Source of the DNA: Fimbriosthenelais zetlandica
Taxonomy: Eukaryota
Assembly (NCBI GenBank): GCA_977030845.1
Contig: OZ365112.1
Span: 18,414,001-18,478,000 of the forward strand
Direction: 5' to 3'
DNA length: 64,000 nucleotides
Below are positions 961-54,400 of this stretch, piece by piece. Position numbers and translations under genes: made by a program. Under the pieces are notes generated by a model, which searched no databases, was not told the DNA's origin, and saw nothing but the letters and a program-made list of their open reading frames with translations. How positions within the stretch are numbered: position 1 is the stretch's first letter; every line of letters begins with the position of its first letter.

Positions 961-3900
961 GAGACTTTGGGCACGACGTTGACAGTTTCACTGCCACAGG
1001 AACAGTGCTTCTATAGACAATACTGAGGACTCAGCTGGTTGTACTGGAGCATAACTACCCTCCCAACCTCAGAATGACATGAGTGTTGGGGGTTGACGCG
1101 CTAACCCTGTTGACGGGAAGCTTTAGTGAATTTCATACTGAATTTCAGACAGGGCAGAAATGAGGGGATACTTGTATAAGAACTGGGGTGAATGAAGGGC
1201 GAGTTGAGGGGGCGCAATTAAACTTATGACAGGCAGATTACACATCCAGATTAATTGTATTTTTGTGAAGGATGGTTAAGGCCAGCTCGGGGTTCCCATG
1301 GCCAGATCTGTGATGGATGAAGGTTAAATGCCTGTCTTTCACAGGCTTCATCCAAGTCAAGATCATTCCATGACCTCAGTCACAATCCTCAATGATTTCT
1401 TCAAAATATCAGAATAAAAAAAATATGCATTTGGCAATGACCTTAATATTTTAACCTCTGGATCAATCGCCATGTCTTAACCTGTATATTCCAATGGCAA
1501 TATTTGCTATACGATGCCTTTTCCATACGCGTTGCACCCCCAAGTACCACTGACACACACTGAGAAGGGCCCATACCTTTGGCCAATCCTTTCATGCCTC
1601 ACTGAGCTTGATTGATAAGAAAATTTCATCCAGTCACATCAGCCATTTCATTCGCATCTGGGCATCCTGTAATTTGGAGTGAATATCGGGGTGGGAGCCT
1701 AGGTCAGGCGGGGGGCTGGGCAGGGGAAGGGACATGCTGCATTCCCAGCCAGGTCGCCAGATCAAAGACAAGTCTGAATCAATACGCATTAGAGGCGTCC
1801 CTTCCCACCAGAGGCAGCACCAGTCATCCCCCTCCCCACTCGCTGCCAATATATGCAATACCAGATCAAGATCCAAATATTCCAACTCCCGCCAAGAAAT
1901 ATTTCCAAACTAGACGTAAATGATTCACTTATAAAACAGAACCATCTACATGTACATTAAGTACATATATTAAATGAATTTGGAAATTCAAAGAGGATTA
2001 TTAGATCTAAGAGGGTGGCATTGTTAGCGGGGACCGCGTCACCTGAGCTTTGGGAAGGCGTCAGTCAAGCCTTTCATTACGAGTTCATTTCATTTCACTG
2101 GCTCAAAACAAAACCCTAAGATCCAGGAGTACTTCAAAAAGAAAACCACATAAAATCTCCGCCTCCCCACCCCTCACCGTGAACCTTAAGGTTGGTTATC
2201 TCGTGCCTTTCCACTTGATGAACCAGCGCCCTTCCAACTTCAAACACGCGCCCAGAGCGACTAAATCTGATTTCCTGCTACATTGCATACGGACAGCTTG
2301 CCCCCAGTCGGCGTTAAAGTTCCTACCAAAATACTGGCAGAGAATTGTGGCCACTTTTTATACCATGGCTTCAGCCAAGTTCACCTTTCCAGGGACATGC
2401 TTGCTTTGTCAAAGCCCCGGGTCAACGCCAACTAAATGACATCTAAAGAGACACAAAGGTGCACAAACGGGGCCTCATTGGAGGCAATGTCTTAGCAGGG
2501 CGATGTCAATAGCCCCCATTTCCAGGCTGGTTATGTTGAGGTTGCAGATAGGCAGGAATGGAATTGACAAAGCCAGGGTGGGGAAGATTAGTCGAGCTTT
2601 CAAGGACAATAAGGGGTCATATAACTCTGGTGAGACAAGAGTATTAAGATCCAAACCCAGATCTATACTTTTTTTACAAATATTTTCGGACAACTTTTCG
2701 CCAACCGTTCATACATTATTCAGGACATAATTTAGGGCAGTAGAGACATCCAGTGAATATTTGAGTAATGCCCACGACAAATGGAATCAAATCTCATTGA
2801 CAATAGCACGGCTGACCGTAGTGCTCAAAATGCCCTCAGGCCCTCCTCTCAGGCCCGGCACCTGAGGGCCCTTCACCCACCACTTGATTGAGTACATTTC
2901 ATCATATTAACTCAGCCAGATTAAATAGCCTTTAATGTATTATGTAAGGGTCTGCCACACACTTCCCCTAAGGATCCAAACGTTAGAGATCAAAAGTTGG
3001 ATGTATTGTAGTAGAAATTGTGACGATGACACCTCGGGGGGGCAGAGGAGGATTCAATAGAGTGGTCAGTGAAGTGAAGCCAGCACACTACAAGCAATAC
3101 TAATACCTGTAGGTATAGTCTATCTGGGTTGAGTTCTATATTTACTTGATAATTATAGGGTCTTTATCCTAGGGCTTGACACAAATTGAAAATGCCCCGT
3201 GATTTAGGAATGTTGGGTACAAAATTGATGCGGCGATTGTGAAAAGATACATTAATAGATTCATGAAGAGAAACAAATTAAATCATTAAATACAATTATA
3301 TTAAAATGTACGTACCATTGCATTTGTGAAATATCGCTGTACAAATGGTGTGTGAATTGTCCTGGCGGAGGGGGGATGGCATACATGGGAGGTCGGGGGA
3401 GCCCTGGAAGAAAAATCAAAGAAATCAGTAAAATATCATTAGAATGATCAATCCATGCCTCAAAGGGGATGAGAATGGAGTTTCACAATTATGTCCAGAG
3501 TTAACATGAAAGTTACTTTTTAAAAGTGGATTTTATTTATTTATTTAAATTCCCTTTGAAGAATTACACATCTTAAATAAAGGAAACATATTATATAAAA
3601 ATATCAGTGGGGCTTAATACATTTCTAAAGCGGTACCGAGCTGTTCCATGCGTGAATCAAAAATAAAAGCACCCCATCTCATCACATGAGGATGCGTGCA
3701 GCAACCTAACATGACAAACACCCAACTATTTCAAAAAGAACTTTTTTCCTAATTTACTGAAGTTCCCTTTTAGGCATCTTTGTGTTTTTCCGGCTGTAAT
3801 TTTTCTAAGATGAGATGTGATTTTTCAGGTGTTACTCGGGAGTGCGGATGGGCGGATCCCGAGATCTAAAGGTGTACCCGATGTCACCATGGCAAAAAGC

Positions 3901-15570: not shown

Positions 15571-17306
15571 TCTGGTAACTTTGCTGCGTTAAGGGGCATG
15601 ATTCATGCCATAAGGCTCGAATGCACTAACATCCTCCGCTAAAGGACGAGTTTTTATTCTTTAAATTTGCACGAGTTTTTTCCCAGAACATCCCAAAGTC
15701 ACCGGGGGAACAAAAGCACATCTCATAGCCAATTAGCCCATGGGTGTGACTTTCTTCTATCTATGAACTGAAGATGTAAGAGTCTATCTGGAAGATAGTT
15801 GACTATACAAAGAGAATATAGCAACTCTTCCATTTCTCATCAAGACTTGGGTAGAGAAAGAGGGAGTAACTCGCAGGAAACAGACATGTCTACCTTATAC
15901 TCCACCTCCAGCCCTTCCACATACTAATGGTGTTTATCAGACTATATTAGCGAGTGGAGAACTTAATGTCCTACTCAGTCTGAAGGAGGACCTCTATTGG
16001 GGGTCTGCCGTGGTGAGAGGTGAGCATAAACATTCAGGTACAGGCATCCTTTTCCTGCCAGCTTTGCCCAAGTCTGCTTCCCTGTCGGCGCCCACAAGCT
16101 GGTGGCTCCCTGCGCGGCCGCCGCATAAACTAGACGCTGCTTACAAGGCAGGGATGAGAGATGGTTGAATGAGTTCCACCTCTCTCTCTGCTTCTATCAA
16201 TACATCAAATCATGATGAAACACATAGAGACAGGTCTAGAGGAAACATACTCCCCATGTGGAGGATGGAGGCTGGCGGTTTATGAGCTCTATCTATTGTT
16301 CTGGCACGGGTTTATCTGGGGTTGTGGCATGATTTGGTGTTGACACTAGAAGGGTTGGAGAAGTGGGTGATAGAGGGTTGAATGTTTACAGGGTGGCAAT
16401 GTGGAGGAGAGGAGGATGACAGGAAGAGAGGGAGACCATCACTGACCATGTAATCTGCCAGCAAATAAAGCTATAAAATAGCATCATTAAGAGATTCCAG
16501 GAAGTGATAATGCTGGAGTGAAATACATTCATACTTAACACGTCCGACAACCCACAGCTCAAACATTTACATCAAGCCTCTCACCGCACAGAAACATTTA
16601 TTTTCTGTCCAATTTTCACGCTTTTTTGAAGCAGATATTTCAGTTATAGATAAGAAGCCACTCACATGGCGCCCATATAGACAAAGCCCGCGCCGCGCGA
16701 CCACACGCCCCCCATGCCTAACTCAAGCCAGCCCCAGGAGTTGTTTGAAATTAAGTTGTCAGTACTCGAAGCTGTCTCCTTGAATTTCTTCTCATGCCAA
16801 TTAGCCATTTTCTCGCCCATCCAGCCTATATAGCAGGCCAAACACTTGAGCTGATCCTTCTTCGCCGGAGCTGGCCATGGCCACGCCTACCCCGGCGCCG
16901 CATGTCAGTCATACCCCTAAACCATGGACAGCGACCCGCCGTGATGATATATTTACTTGGCTTTTTTCTGGAGTTCGATGCAGACTTACCTTCATCATTT
17001 TACATAAGCTTATAAAAAGATCTCAGAGGGAGGGAATGGAGAACAACATTTGAGGCGTAGAGTATATTTATATAAGAGATATTGGGTACAGAGTAATATT
17101 ACTCTGCCGTGGAGCAGAAACCAACAAATCTTTCCCCTCCACAAACTTATAGTCACTCAATATTGTTTAGCACGATAACATGGAACAGCTCGACATCAAC
17201 TTAAATATTTCACTTAAATATTCTATAAAAATAGATCAAAACTCAAAAGTGTTTTCAGTGTTAGTATGAGCCATGATTCTATGAGATAGAGTAAGGATAG
17301 ACTTAC

Positions 17307-17439
17307 CAGTTTTGGGGTCTATATGTACAGGAGGGATACCCATGTGCGCGGGAGGGGGTTGTGCTAGCGATTCGCTACCTGGATAGATCATCAACGACGA
17401 TAGCGAACCCGGGTGCGGTGGCACCGGAACTTTGCTGCC
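17307..17439 (-). CDS. TCF: Internal coding exon of a TCF/LEF (pangolin / TCF7L2-like) HMG-box transcription factor, from the context-dependent/Groucho-binding region
   Basis: The minus strand reads ttttgcag|GGC AGC AAA GTT CCG ... GAC CCC AAA ACT G|gtaagt: 44 codons plus 1 nt, phase 0 in and phase 1 out. The peptide GSKVPV...QPPPAHMGIPPVHIDPKTG matches the vertebrate TCF7L2 exon SNKVPV...DVDPKTG and the invertebrate TCF/Pangolin PPPAHMGIPP motif (recognised from memory). Confidence 0.93.
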
Positions 17440-19389
17440 CTGCAAAACACAAAATGTAAATCATATTATTACATTATTCACCACAACTGAGAGTGAATCT
17501 AAAAATTATGCGGTCTCAATCATAAACATCCTACAATAGACAAGCTAGCTAATGACATTTCGAAAATTTAGGCAATTGACATACAATTAATGAGTGAACG
17601 TTAATGTTCCTGATACAATATCTAAGGTTGCGACTGTTGATTATATAGTACTTTGGGTTTGGTCACAGAAGCATAACCGTACAAGCCTTTGTTCAAGGAT
17701 AATTAGGGTAGAGCCCTAATTGCCACCCGGGTTAATTGACACCAGTAATGGTGTGGCCAAATGGGATCCAGAATGGCGCCATATATATTCTGTAATCACT
17801 AACAAATATCAATATACAGATGACAAATACATGCGTGTATACATATAATAAATCATCTAAATTTCATTTGGAGGAGTGAGATAAGATAAGGCGTGAAGTA
17901 GTGAGTGTGTGGTCTCAATTGTAAAACAAATGAATGTATGGAGGAATGCAGTGAACTGATTCAACGTGTATCAGACGATGTGGCAGCATGACGCGGGTTA
18001 ATATTGAATGAGGGCTGGGCTTTATCCTCCGTCTTTTACCGATCTGTCAGATCATTTTAACATGGTGTTCTGACCGGGATACGGTCATTTGGCATCGTGC
18101 ATGCTTTGGGAAGATCAAACTGTGTGAGGTACATCTACCGGAGACCACAACACCATTCACATACATACTCAGTGCAAATGTCTGTACTGGCATTTTATCT
18201 ACTACATTTTGCCCATTTTCCCGACATAGATCTATACATTTCCCGCGACAAGAAACTCCAGTAGTTCATTACAGCAAATGTGAATCAACGTGTGCATCAA
18301 TCATCTTGGAGTCATTAAACAAAATGATTAATTTCTTAATTTTTCATTCTCAAAATCAGTCAATTATCCAGAGGGGTCCGTTGTATCACTTTACAGAGTT
18401 TCATTATCGTGTAATAAGCTAAGATGATCAAGTATTTTTCCTGAGGAGACTAGATGTGATTTGGTGTAGATAAAATACAGCATGTCAGCTAACCTAGAAA
18501 TCAGGGTTAGACCAGAGGCGGGGAGAGCTGGGACAGACTGTATTGGAGGGGCGTGGTGGGCTCATCCCCCTTTGTATGGATCAAAGACTTGGAGTGGCCA
18601 CAGGAGGACGGTCTGGAGGAGGGCCCCATCCACCACCGTCCTCTTGTGTGCATAAATACCAGTCAGACCAGGCCTAATGGACCTCCAGGGTCAATTAATA
18701 AGCCGTCAAGTCCTGCCTAATAACGGGCCCGGGTCCCGCAAGGCTAGCCCTTAGCTTTATTACTGAATCCAAATCAGCTAGAAATTAACCAAATTAACGG
18801 CACGTCCAGCCCTCCAGGCGCGCGCGACGTGCACCGCGATCCCGAGCAGCGTGACGGAACGCACTGACGTCATGACCAGAGAGGCGGTGATAACAGCCGG
18901 CAAACACAGGAGGTTAATTGGCTACAGGTCATAGGTGTAGTATGGATTATCAACCCTCTGGCCTTCATAAAACCCTGTCCCTGTGTAACGACCCTGACCC
19001 TAGCAATAACTCAACTATAGGTCTTCTTTCACCGCCAATATTTCATAGATCGACCTTAACAGGAAAGTGATGTTGGCGTCGGCCAGTCTCTACTTAGCCT
19101 GCTTTGTGTTTTTGATCATGATGGCAATAACTGACCCCCACACAGCCATGTGACAAGGTCTGACCACGCCATGAGGGCACACAACCAAGCCTAGAGAGCA
19201 AGCAGTGACCAGCAGTAGTATAGACAGAGTGACCAGTGGGCATGGCTGGACATCCGAGTAGTATAAGAAGAGACCTTTTCAGCTGGTCATTTTGGGGCAT
19301 TTTTTAAATCCTTTTAGAGAAGTGGCTTCATTAGATATGGGAGGAGGAGGATTGGGGGAATGACATACTAGTTGACCTGTATATTGAGA

Positions 19390-50800: not shown

Positions 50801-51389
50801 ACAACACACATATAAATGTACCTGGCTCACACCCTAACAGGTCATGCTTGGGCTGCTTGGCAGGGTTTAGATTCACCTGTTTCCCCATTCCTGGCATCCT
50901 GACAGATAGACCTGTTAGTGTATAAATTTGGTGTTGGGATTGAATGGGGGACAGCTCTCAGTCTGTTAGCCACTGTCACCCAGTTGGAGGTTTGCCATTG
51001 TCCCCGGTCAAACACCAGCTATGACCCCAGCGTGGATGTTCATGACACATACTGCAGGGATCCATAACGATCCTAAAGCTCCTCGTTGTCCACACCAAAT
51101 AATTGCTGGTGTGAATAGTCGGAGCCCACTCCCAACACTTCAACATGTATCCACCATTCAGTAAGTAATGAAATTCCAGTAGGGGTTAATCCCGAGGCAT
51201 ATACCAGTCGAATACCAGCTTAGAGCCTCAGTAAACTACATAGGCCTATACCCTTTTATAGACAAAAATACCCAGCTGAAATTAATATATATGTGCAGGA
51301 TATCTGAAACGTAATTTGTAATATCAAGATAACATTTCGCATACCTTATCCTTCGCTTCCAAGTAATGGTATTCCAAATCAAACCAGGT

Positions 51390-51412
51390 ACTTACCTGAA
51401 AAGAAAAAGTTT
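51390..51412 (-). other. Candidate recursive splice site (ratchet point / zero-length exon)
   Basis: The minus strand reads aaactttttcttttCAG|GTAAGTac: a pyrimidine tract and 3' splice site directly abutting a consensus 5' splice site, in TCF sense orientation. Junction at 51396/51395. Confidence 0.6.
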
Positions 51413-54400
51413 AATTGTGAGATTTAATGTTTTAGAGGTAATTTAAAGCATACTAATATGTGAAATAAGTTCAGTATGAGGTGATGTGGGTGAGGTAGAG
51501 AGAACAATGAGGATAAGGACCCCTGACCCTCTATACAAAAGTCCCTCTAAGCCGGGCCCTGACAGTATGTGGTAGATAGATCATAGATGCTCGGTAAGGA
51601 AGAAGACAATTGAACAATAGAAAGCAAAAAAAAAAAGTAATGTGTTCACAAAGCACTGGTGAATGATGGCGACCAGTGGTGCTCCAAACCCATCACCTCA
51701 TCCCAAACACTGATATGTAATTCTATCCTAAACATATTTTCAAAATCAAATATAATCAAAATCCAATAACCATTTACAAATTATATAGTGTATTCATACA
51801 TTGAATTATTCTACATTCTACATTTATAATACAAAGTACATAGGAATATGGTAAACAAGTGTTTTTTCTGAAGTACCTTATCGTATGTTATCGGGATAAG
51901 TAGGAAGCGTGGAAAACAGATGTTTCAGGAGGAATCGTTTTAGTATTGCCAAAGAAATATGAATAAAAAGTAAAGCTGAAGGTATCCATTCACAGAATAA
52001 AGTCTTCTTAATTCTTTCATAGCGTCTTTTTTCTTTATAAACCAAACTCCTCTTTCTTTCCTTTCAAGTAAACCATCTTTCAGTGGTTTTGGATTTAAAA
52101 AGAAAGAGAACAACAGTAAGAGGATGCCCCTGGAAAAATACTTAGAGGGATATAAGAAGTGACTAAGAGATTGGAAATAAGAGAATTAAACAGTATATCC
52201 CCTCGGGATGTAAAACAATTGAAGAGTCTTTTGAGACCAATATGATACCTTGAACTTCATACGTCTCTACCTTAAAATCGAGCAACGACAACGACTCACA
52301 TGTTCAACTATTTTTTCGCCTAATTCAGAGATACACTTGATGTTCACGATCATATTAAAACACAGTATTTTTGCGACACTAAAAGCAATGGACAACTTGG
52401 TTCAAAAGAAAACATGGTGTTTCCTGGGGAGAGAGGGGATAAATTAATAGCTATCTGGTCCACTCATTGTGAAGGTTCTGTCGTCAGTTTTTTCATCTAT
52501 AGCCGTATATATATGAGTGATTCAGTATTATGATTGGCCGGAGGGCTAGCATGCATAACCTTCATGCTACAAGGTGTGGCGTTGTACATATCAATGGCCA
52601 CTTTGTCAGCGTTTTGTTAACACGAAAGCAGAAATGTGTTGGGTGGACAAGGCCCTTCACCCCCTCATCTTGTCCACTACCTCCTCACTGTATACATACA
52701 CTGACCATCGTGTCACGCGGACAATGGGCGAGGTCGGGTCGGACCTGCAGAGTCCAGAGATCACTCATGTCCAATAGAGATCGTTACTCCAGCCCACACA
52801 TCATCTTATGTCACTATTGTAAGCTTCGTCAGAACTCCATTTTATATAACAAGCCCTGGGGCCGTCAATTCCAGGTGAAAAGCTCAATTGAAAGGGGACT
52901 TTAATAAGTTTGTATTGTGTTATAACTAGTTGCATGTCATGTACCAATTATGAGTTATTTTTATCATTTGATTGTGATGTGAAATGGATTATTAATTTCT
53001 AGAATAATGGAGAAGTATACAAAGTAGAGAAAGCATCACAGTTTTAATGGAACCCTATAACCTAGAAACCTCTAAGTACTTATAACCATACATATATATA
53101 AAAGGATGTAGGTAGAGGAGCTCAGCACGGCTGATCGTAAAGCCTTGTTTTGGCTCGGGTGGCGTTTTAATGGCCTCGGCTGACAATCACTTAGACCTAG
53201 TTAGGGACATAGGATCGCGCTCGACAGCCCCAAGATTGGCCAACAGCTGTTCAAGACTGACCTGCAGCCAACATCCAGATGAGGCGAGGACATTATCGGG
53301 AAAGAAATGACCAGGAGCTGGAGGAGGGGGCGTCAGGAGCAAATCTGCTACTTCTATTTTAGTCTATCACAGGTCCATTAACAATTGAAGCCATGGTCAC
53401 TTGTATGGATGGCATTAGATAAGCCATTGAATGCCTTAACCCAGGGCAATAACAGTAACCACAATCCGAAGATCAATTAAAATTGGAATGGTGAGTGATA
53501 TTAGAGGAGATTTGAGTTATTGGGAGGGTGGAGTGAGGAGGCTTATTGGCAGGGTGTTGGTGGTGGTCTCTGGTGGAGCGAGGGCTATGAATTATTAGTT
53601 TCCTCTCGCTGGGTGTGAGCGGACATCTAGGGGTGTGGATGGAGGTGCCTTTTGATGTCACTGACCACCAGATCCCGTCACTTGGGTCTGTGACTGGTCA
53701 GTGACAATGCTGTTCTGTGGCTCATTACCAGTCAAGCTTCATATAATAAACATGGCTTAGTAAGTAGGGGTCAGGTTAGAGCAATGTGCGCTGGTCATAC
53801 ATCAACATTAGGCCTTCCTTCTCCCTCCATAGACCCACTCACATACAAGAGTCAACAAAACTCAAACAAGAACCATGACCTTGCTCCATCAGATTTAATA
53901 GCAATCGTCTTTGATTGATTCTTTACTCATTTTTCTCCCACCCAGTCTTGGTTGCCAAGCGATGATACATTGCCCTTACTCAACACTAATGCTCTGGATT
54001 TTGTTTGTTATGAAGCCCTGATTATGATCTATAAAGGCCACTTCATCATCAGCAGATAGAAGTGAATGTTTCTGACAGAGAATGTGAAGGAAAGGTGTAA
54101 ATATTGCGAAGGGATGTCTCTCATGGCTCACATAGGCCAGACTTAGACACTAGTCTCATAGATTAGCAGGCAGGCCGAATAGTGAAGACCATAGAGCGTC
54201 TGCAATCTAACCCTCACAGCGCCAGGAGAAGCAGCACTAAAACATACCACACTGTAAACTCTTAACCTCCAATTAATCAACTAAAACAGCCACATTCAAT
54301 ACAATTACATCATCCCCGCAGCAAGAAAAGCTAATATAGTTAAGATAGCTGTAAAGATTTTACCGCATTGCTGGCCGTGATAATTGTGAATATTTGCTAC

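What the first reader, a model, noticed from the sequence alone, without database searches (positions are those of the whole stretch)
51385..51430. Candidate recursive splice site (ratchet point) in the giant TCF intron
Seen: the sense strand reads tctcacaattaaactttttcttttCAG|GTAAGTACCTG. This is a branch-like CTCAC, a pyrimidine tract, and CAG followed directly by a perfect GTAAGT, about 34 kb upstream of the next acceptor. I found no equally good site elsewhere on either strand. CAGGT-aagt-ACCTG also forms a 5-bp hairpin over the junction that could mask it. Established: AG|GT ratchet points remove very long introns stepwise in Drosophila developmental genes and some long vertebrate genes. 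Inference: this TCF intron is spliced recursively, which I do not know to have been described for this gene in such an animal.
Basis: partly seen in the sequence, partly recalled or inferred. Interest (0 to 1): 0.75.

Follow-up and report, generated by a model that had tools for sequence, protein, structure and literature searches.

The report
Predicted recursive splice site, TCF intron
Deep inside a giant intron of an invertebrate TCF (Wnt-pathway) gene, an intron end is fused directly to a perfect intron start and followed by a 51-base hidden exon, the signal flies use to cut long introns out in steps, but no RNA data could be examined, so its use is still only predicted.

Summary
The minus strand reads ...CTCAC-aattaaa-CTTTTTCTTTTC-AG|GTAAGTACCTG, with AG ending at 51396 and GT starting at 51395. 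A TCF exon is confirmed on that strand at 17439..17307, 33,956 nt downstream. No TCF exon lies between it and the window end, so the site is deep in an intron.

Every sequence-level feature of a fly-type ratchet point is present:
- a 12-nt unbroken pyrimidine tract with TT at -5/-6;
- a branch-like A at -23;
- a perfect donor;
- one weaker donor (AAG|GTATGC) 51 nt downstream, defining a short RS-exon.

It is the best AG|GT site on either strand. Chance expectation per sense strand of the window is about 0.004-0.06.

No functional evidence could be obtained. The sequencing-run tool was busy twice and then closed, so no junction reads, saw-tooth or lariats were seen. No close relative's intron was available. 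The 42-kb orthologous intron of the annelid Lamellibrachia has no equal site. The proposed hairpin is weak.

The scan has already noted similar ratchet points in other giant introns of this genome (liprin-alpha, Kv2, TPST, cadherin, EXT1, PRDM3/16), all without RNA proof.

Verdict: a plausible recursive site (about 0.5), a new member of a known kind.

The parts
51417..51421 (-). Branch-point-like CTCAC, with the candidate branch A at 51418 (-23 from the 3' splice site)
   Evidence: Sequence. Fly ratchet-point branch points lie at -36 to -21 (10.1101/006163). The nearest upstream AG is 51464-51463, about 65 nt before the 3' splice site (read).
51396..51409 (-). 3' splice site: 12-nt unbroken pyrimidine tract CTTTTTCTTTTC (51409-51398) plus AG (51397-51396), with TT at -5/-6
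   Evidence: Only 8 of 3756 AGs on this strand follow a 12-Y run.
51390..51395 (-). Ratchet-point donor GTAAGT, directly abutting the AG
   Evidence: The intronic part scores 9.1 bits against 4.6 for the downstream donor.
51345..51395 (-). Candidate 51-nt RS-exon, open in the intron's phase 0 (VSTWFDLEYHYLEAKDK)
   Evidence: It has no similarity to any of 165 TCF proteins.
51339..51344 (-). RS-exon donor AAG|GTATGC, the only donor-like site scoring at least 4 bits in the next 299 nt (the next one lies at +300)
   Evidence: 7.9 bits with its exonic AAG.
51385..51398 (-). Palindrome CAGGT-AAGT-ACCTG, a weak 5-bp hairpin over the junction
   Evidence: -4.4 kcal/mol, about 25% pair probability, region z-score -0.10.
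17307..17439 (-). Next TCF coding exon (133 nt), acceptor ttttgcag|GGC, donor CTG|GTAAGT
3315..3404 (-). Following TCF exon, matching Platynereis TCF residues 145-175; boundaries are approximate
   Evidence: tblastn (81% over 31 aa).

Best explanation
The site is an intronic recursive splice site (ratchet point) of the fly type, and I infer the following sequence of events. While the very long TCF intron is transcribed, the spliceosome recognises a short cryptic exon. Its acceptor is the strong pyrimidine tract plus AG at 51396, and its donor is AAG|GTATGC at 51345/51344. The upstream TCF exon is joined to position 51395, removing the first part of the intron. That join rebuilds a donor, with the exon end followed by GTAAGT, which is stronger than the cryptic exon's own donor. 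The rebuilt donor is then used with the acceptor at 17440. This removes the 51-nt cryptic exon together with the remaining 33,956 nt and leaves no trace in the mRNA. Shown here: the motif, its rarity, its strand and position, and the RS-exon architecture. Inferred: that the site is actually used, and that it is kept by selection.
For: A perfect juxtaposed 3'ss|5'ss lies on the sense strand. TT at -5/-6 is present, as in 99.5% of fly ratchet points, and the branch-like A at -23 falls in the fly range of -36 to -21 (10.1101/006163). It is the top-scoring AG|GT site of 482 on both strands. The chance expectation is 0.0064 per strand under the Markov model and 0.004-0.06 empirically. The site is in an intron with at least 46.6 kb inside the window and no TCF exon between 17440 and 64000. 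Recursive sites are common in fly introns over 40 kb and in developmental genes (PMC6110457). A single weaker donor 51 nt downstream matches the ~50-nt cryptic RS-exon and the rule that the ratchet-point donor is the stronger one (PMC8605326). The plus strand is A-rich across most of the window, so the minus strand is T-rich, as expected for an intron sense strand. As leads only, other agents report fly-type ratchet points in other giant introns of this genome, some kept in a related species.
Against: No conservation was shown. In the nearest accessible relative (L001) only the exon aligns and only 9.5 kb upstream is available. The 42-kb orthologous intron of Lamellibrachia satsuma has no comparable site; its best is tatttcag|GTAAAT. 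The thresholds for the chance estimates were set after the fact, and the scan looks at very many windows. The candidate RS-exon is in frame and open, whereas fly cryptic RS-exons are generally out of frame (PMC8605326). Only one strong site was found for about 46 kb of intron in the window. The other sense-strand AG|GT sites (39101, 44060) lack TT at -5/-6, and the 44060 donor (GTACGT) is weaker.
Confidence: 0.5

Rival explanations
1. The motif is a chance juxtaposition in a long, T-rich intron. It is not used, or is used only as rare splicing noise, and the intron is removed in one step.
For: The core YAGGTAAGT is expected about once per window. The estimates for the full motif use post-hoc thresholds, and one empirical estimate is as high as 0.06 per strand. 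Conservation could not be shown and there are no RNA data. The local fold is unremarkable.
Against: Five independent fly-type features coincide at one position on the sense strand: a 12-Y tract, TT at -5/-6, a branch A at -23, a perfect donor, and a weaker donor at +51. Stricter estimates give 0.004-0.006 per strand. Nothing comparable is found on the antisense strand.
Confidence: 0.32
2. The 51 nt at 51395..51345 form an expressed, frame-preserving alternative micro-exon of the Ubx mI/mII type. It adds 17 residues (VSTWFDLEYHYLEAKDK) to the TCF linker in some mRNAs. Inclusion or skipping is decided by competition between the rebuilt GTAAGT donor and the exon's own donor.
For: The length is 51 nt (17 codons) with no stop in the phase set by the next exon, which starts in phase 0. 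Ubx mI and mII are also 51-nt RS-exons (PMC8605326). From my own knowledge, not tested here: vertebrate TCF7L2 has an alternative exon just upstream of the homologous exon.
Against: The peptide has no similarity to any of 165 TCF proteins retrieved, and no spiralian TCF isoform shows a similar insertion before the GSK/GK exon. An open frame with a length divisible by three is expected in roughly 15% of cases by chance. The ratchet-point donor is much stronger than the exon donor, which predicts skipping.
Confidence: 0.12
3. The CAG|GTAAGT is the ordinary donor of an unannotated exon. That exon could be, for example, a non-coding first exon of an internal promoter making a TCF without the beta-catenin-binding domain, or an exon of another transcript.
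For: Internal promoters are known in vertebrate TCF/LEF genes (my own knowledge).
Against: The sequence before the AG is a pure pyrimidine tract with a branch-like motif, which is acceptor-like rather than exon-like. No ORF of 20 aa or more on the minus strand runs across the junction, and no TCF homology is found here. I did not scan for a promoter or CpG island; the 2-kb bin holding the site is 40.5% G+C.
Confidence: 0.05

Closest known systems
Drosophila zero-nucleotide ratchet points with cryptic RS-exons (Ubx, kuz, Bx, luna; Duff et al. 10.1101/006163; Joseph & Lai PMC8605326; Pai et al. PMC6110457)
   Same: It has (Y)n-TT-N-CAG|GTAAGT and a branch about 23 nt upstream. It lies in a developmental-regulator intron far longer than 40 kb. 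The 34-kb downstream segment is within the fly range of 2.6-63.6 kb. A weaker donor about 50 nt downstream defines a short cryptic exon.
   Different: The host is not an arthropod; its TCF exon is closest to annelid TCF. There are no junction reads, saw-tooth, lariats or conservation. The candidate RS-exon is in frame and open, unlike most fly cryptic RS-exons.
Ubx microexons mI and mII (expressed 51-nt RS-exons)
   Same: It is a 51-nt, 17-codon frame-preserving unit that begins with a donor consensus, inside a giant intron of a developmental transcription factor.
   Different: There is no evidence that the 51 nt are ever in mRNA, and no peptide homology. Conservation of the exon could not be tested.
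Vertebrate recursive splicing through RS-exons (Sibley et al. 2015 and Blazquez et al. 2018, as cited in PMC8605326 and PMC6224609)
   Same: The same logic applies: exon definition comes first, followed by competition between the rebuilt donor and the RS-exon donor.
   Different: In vertebrates only a few RS sites are fully suppressed, and their RS-exons typically carry stops or shift the frame. Here the motif is of the fly type (long T-rich tract) and the exon is open.

Membership tests
Intronic recursive splice site (fly-type ratchet point) | [quoted passage not shown] | tested here: met
   ctttttcttttcAG|GTAAGT at 51396/51395 (-).
Intronic recursive splice site (fly-type ratchet point) | Prominent pyrimidine tract with TT at -5/-6 (99.5% of fly ratchet points) | tested here: met
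   A 12-Y run at 51409-51398, with T at 51400 and 51401 (criterion).
Intronic recursive splice site (fly-type ratchet point) | Lies inside a very long intron, with no annotated exon at the site | tested here: met
There is no TCF-like exon between 17440 and 64000 and no ORF across the junction. The intron has at least 46.6 kb inside the window.
Intronic recursive splice site (fly-type ratchet point) | Short cryptic RS-exon (~50 nt) ended by a donor weaker than the ratchet-point donor | tested here: met
   51 nt to AAG|GTATGC; intronic donor bits 9.1 against 4.6; no other donor of at least 4 bits within the next 299 nt (the next is at +300).
Intronic recursive splice site (fly-type ratchet point) | Splice-junction reads from the upstream exon donor to the ratchet point | not testable with these tools
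The upstream exon is also outside the window.
Intronic recursive splice site (fly-type ratchet point) | Saw-tooth of nascent or total RNA coverage, and lariats to and from the site | not testable with these tools
   The same reason applies.
Intronic recursive splice site (fly-type ratchet point) | Evolutionary conservation of the AG|GT island | tested here: inconclusive
   The nearest relatives' exon is only 76-85% identical in protein. In L001 only the exon aligns and only 9.5 kb upstream is held. The contig of P0156 had no DNA. The 42-kb orthologous intron of Lamellibrachia has no equal site. An exact 24-mer scan of metagenome contigs gave 0 hits.
Expressed RS-exon (Ubx mI/mII type) | Frame-preserving, open exon that starts with a donor consensus | tested here: met
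   51 nt with no stop in phase 0.
Expressed RS-exon (Ubx mI/mII type) | Present in some mRNAs or protein isoforms | tested here: inconclusive
   No TCF protein of 165 retrieved has a similar insert. However, this species' own TCF is absent from the protein collections.

The most novel reading that the evidence does not exclude
The 51 nt after the ratchet point are a regulated, translated RS micro-exon, working like Ubx mI/mII. A spiralian TCF would then gain or lose a 17-residue insert in the linker between the beta-catenin-binding and HMG domains, through competition between the rebuilt donor and the exon's own donor. That would link recursive splicing to Wnt-effector isoform choice outside insects and vertebrates.
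Probability: 0.1. Interest if true: 0.6.

Novelty: new member of a known kind. Interest (0 to 1): 0.35.

Why it matters
Recursive splicing is documented in flies and vertebrates. My literature searches listed no paper combining it with annelid or mollusc terms, or with any TCF gene. If the site is confirmed, it would add evidence that the fly-type ratchet point, with its T-rich tract, TT at -5/-6 and ~50-nt cryptic exon, is used in a third major animal branch, and in the single Wnt-effector gene of the animal. That bears on how very long developmental-gene introns are spliced accurately. On its own it remains a prediction, and the scan already holds several similar predictions for this genome.

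Tried and rejected

2. Rfam. No hits in the window, so this is not a U1-like or other RNA gene.

3. Repeat or transposon origin. The 2 kb around the site have no other copy in the window.

4. Hairpin masking. The stem is weak and the region folds no better than shuffles.

5. Finding this species' TCF or a close relative.
- The exon peptide against 1.84 billion representatives, Platynereis TCF against the 5.8-billion collection, and the 69-aa genomic ORF gave nothing above 85% identity.
- The contig of P0156 had no DNA.
- L001 aligns only at the exon.
- Owenia, Lineus, Tubulanus and Liolophura isoforms were not on record.

6. Exact 24-mer scan of metagenome contigs: 0 hits.

7. Coding-exon reading. 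No ORF runs across the site, and the 17-mer has no homology.

8. Other sense-strand AG|GT sites (39101, 44060, 46410, 39194). All are weaker and lack TT at -5/-6. Their number is not above chance: 3 observed against 1.0 expected at the loose threshold.

9. My first Markov simulation timed out and was redone.

Full report
**The observation**

The minus strand at 51385-51426 reads tctcacaattaaactttttcttttCAG|GTAAGTACCTG, exactly as reported.
- AG is 51397-51396 and GT is 51395-51394.
- The unbroken pyrimidine tract CTTTTTCTTTTC is 51409-51398, with T at -5 and -6.
- CTCAC is 51421-51417, which puts a candidate branch A at -23.
- The nearest upstream AG lies about 65 nt before the site, so no AG intervenes between the branch and the acceptor.

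**Gene context**

No long ORFs or Rfam families are in the window. A TCF exon is nevertheless clear on the minus strand at 17439..17307.
- Its flanks are ttttgcag|GGC...ACTG|gtaagt.
- It encodes GSKVPVPPHPGSLSSLMIYPGSESLAQPPPAHMGIPPVHIDPKT(G).
- It is 76% identical to residues 101-145 of Platynereis dumerilii TCF/LEF, and it matches the same segment of many spiralian and arthropod TCFs.
- The next exon is near 3404..3315.
- tblastn with eleven TCF proteins found no further exon between 17440 and 64000.

The site is therefore 33,956 nt upstream of the next acceptor, deep inside an intron. At least 46.6 kb of that intron lie in the window.

Earlier notes of this scan place the upstream exons tens of kb beyond the window end, which would give roughly 90 kb in all. 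I could not check that. The plus strand is A-rich through most of the window, so the minus strand is T-rich, as intron sense strands usually are.

**Is it more than chance?**

The bare core YAGGTAAGT is expected about once per window on both strands (observed 1, expected 0.99). With six pyrimidines and one mismatch allowed the expectation is 0.70. The core alone is therefore not remarkable. The full composite is:
- In a scan of all 482 AGGT sites with a generic donor matrix and a pyrimidine count, 51395 is the best site on either strand.
- In 30 Mb of 3rd-order Markov sequence modelled on the sense strand, sites at least this good occur 0.0064 times per 64 kb. None occurred when TT at -5/-6 was also required.
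- An empirical estimate from the real sequence starts from the 2 AGGTAAGT on the sense strand. It multiplies them by the share of AGs preceded by such a tract: 3.0%, or 0.37% with TT, or 0.2% with a 12-Y run. That gives 0.06 down to 0.004.

These thresholds were chosen after seeing the site, and the scan inspects very many windows. They show that the motif is unusual, not that it is used.

The only donor-like site in the next 299 nt is AAG|GTATGC at 51345/51344; the next, much weaker one lies at +300. It defines a 51-nt unit, 51395..51345.

Its donor is weaker than the ratchet-point donor (4.6 against 9.1 bits for the intronic parts). This is the architecture now held to underlie fly ratchet points: a ~50-nt cryptic RS-exon is recognised first, and then the stronger regenerated donor is used, so the exon is skipped (PMC8605326).

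Fly ratchet points also carry TT at -5/-6 in 99.5% of cases. Their branch points lie at -36 to -21, and the segments they remove measure 2.6-63.6 kb (10.1101/006163). Recursive sites are common in fly introns over 40 kb and in developmental genes (PMC6110457). The present site meets each of these sequence-level criteria.

One feature is unusual. The 51 nt are a multiple of three and open in the phase set by the next exon (VSTWFDLEYHYLEAKDK). Fly cryptic RS-exons are generally out of frame, while the expressed Ubx microexons mI and mII are, like this one, 51 nt long. However, the peptide resembles nothing in 165 TCF proteins. No spiralian isoform shows a similar insert before the GSK/GK exon. 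An open, in-frame 51-mer is expected by chance in roughly one case in seven.

**The hairpin**

CAGGT/ACCTG can pair, at -4.4 kcal/mol alone and -6.0 with an added U-G pair. Its pair probability is about 25% in 201 nt of context. The 101-nt region folds no better than shuffles (z = -0.10). Masking by this hairpin is not supported as a real feature.

**Evidence I could not get**

- Close relatives. This species' own TCF is not in the protein collections, and the nearest exon relatives are 76-85% identical.
- One relative's contig (L001) aligns with the window only at the exon (77% nt). It holds just 9.5 kb upstream, with no ratchet-like site. Another relative's contig had no DNA.
- In Lamellibrachia satsuma (L002) the orthologous intron is also the largest mapped in the gene, about 42 kb. 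Its best AG|GT site is only tatttcag|GTAAAT.
- Four other look-ups returned nothing. An exact 24-mer scan of metagenome contigs found nothing.
- Conservation is therefore untested at the relevant distance, and it is absent at long range.

**Other notes of the scan**

Many first-stage notes and several follow-ups on this same genome describe fly-type ratchet points in other giant introns: liprin-alpha, Kv2, TPST, cadherin, EXT1 and PRDM3/16. A related species reportedly keeps some of them, but all lack RNA proof. I treat these as leads only. If they hold, they raise the prior that this genome uses recursive splicing widely.

**Reading**

The most likely explanation (about 0.5) is a genuine intronic recursive site. 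It would split the TCF intron so that its last 34 kb are removed in a second step, with the 51-nt RS-exon skipped.

The rivals are:
- a chance motif that is unused or used only as noise (about 0.32);
- an expressed 51-nt RS micro-exon (about 0.12);
- the donor of an unannotated ordinary exon (about 0.05). This is disfavoured because the upstream sequence is acceptor-like and no ORF crosses the junction.

**Literature**

In the searches combining recursive splicing with TCF7L2/pangolin, or with annelid, mollusc or spiralian terms, none of the listed papers held 'recursive splic'. The mechanism itself is well known, so this is a new member of a known kind. It is of moderate interest until RNA data exist.

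Noticed in passing
window 16981-16991 (-): This is the only other AGGTAAGT on the sense strand: aaaatgatgaAG|GTAAGTctg, about 315 nt downstream of the TCF exon donor. It has no pyrimidine tract, so it is donor-like only. The ATGATGAAG before it would be out of phase with the next TCF exon.
   Followed up: partly
window 39101 and 44060 (-): These are weaker sense-strand AG|GT sites (ccaccag|GTAAGG and catcccag|GTACGT). Both lack TT at -5/-6. Their number is not above chance.
   Followed up: partly
L002 7321-49390 (+), Lamellibrachia satsuma TCF gene: The intron before the homologous GSK... exon is also the largest mapped in this annelid's TCF gene, at about 42 kb. A very long intron at this position may therefore be an old feature. 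From my own knowledge, vertebrate TCF7L2 also has its largest introns and an alternative exon here.
   Followed up: partly
window 17440-17435 (-): The real acceptor reads tgcagGGCAGcaaag. A second AG lies 5 nt into the exon, and using it would shift the frame.
   Followed up: no
window 51385-51398 (+): On the plus strand the site reads CAG|GTACTTACCTG. It contains ACTTACCTG, the letters of the U1 snRNA 5' end. This is simply the complement of a perfect donor, and there is no Rfam U1 hit.
   Followed up: yes
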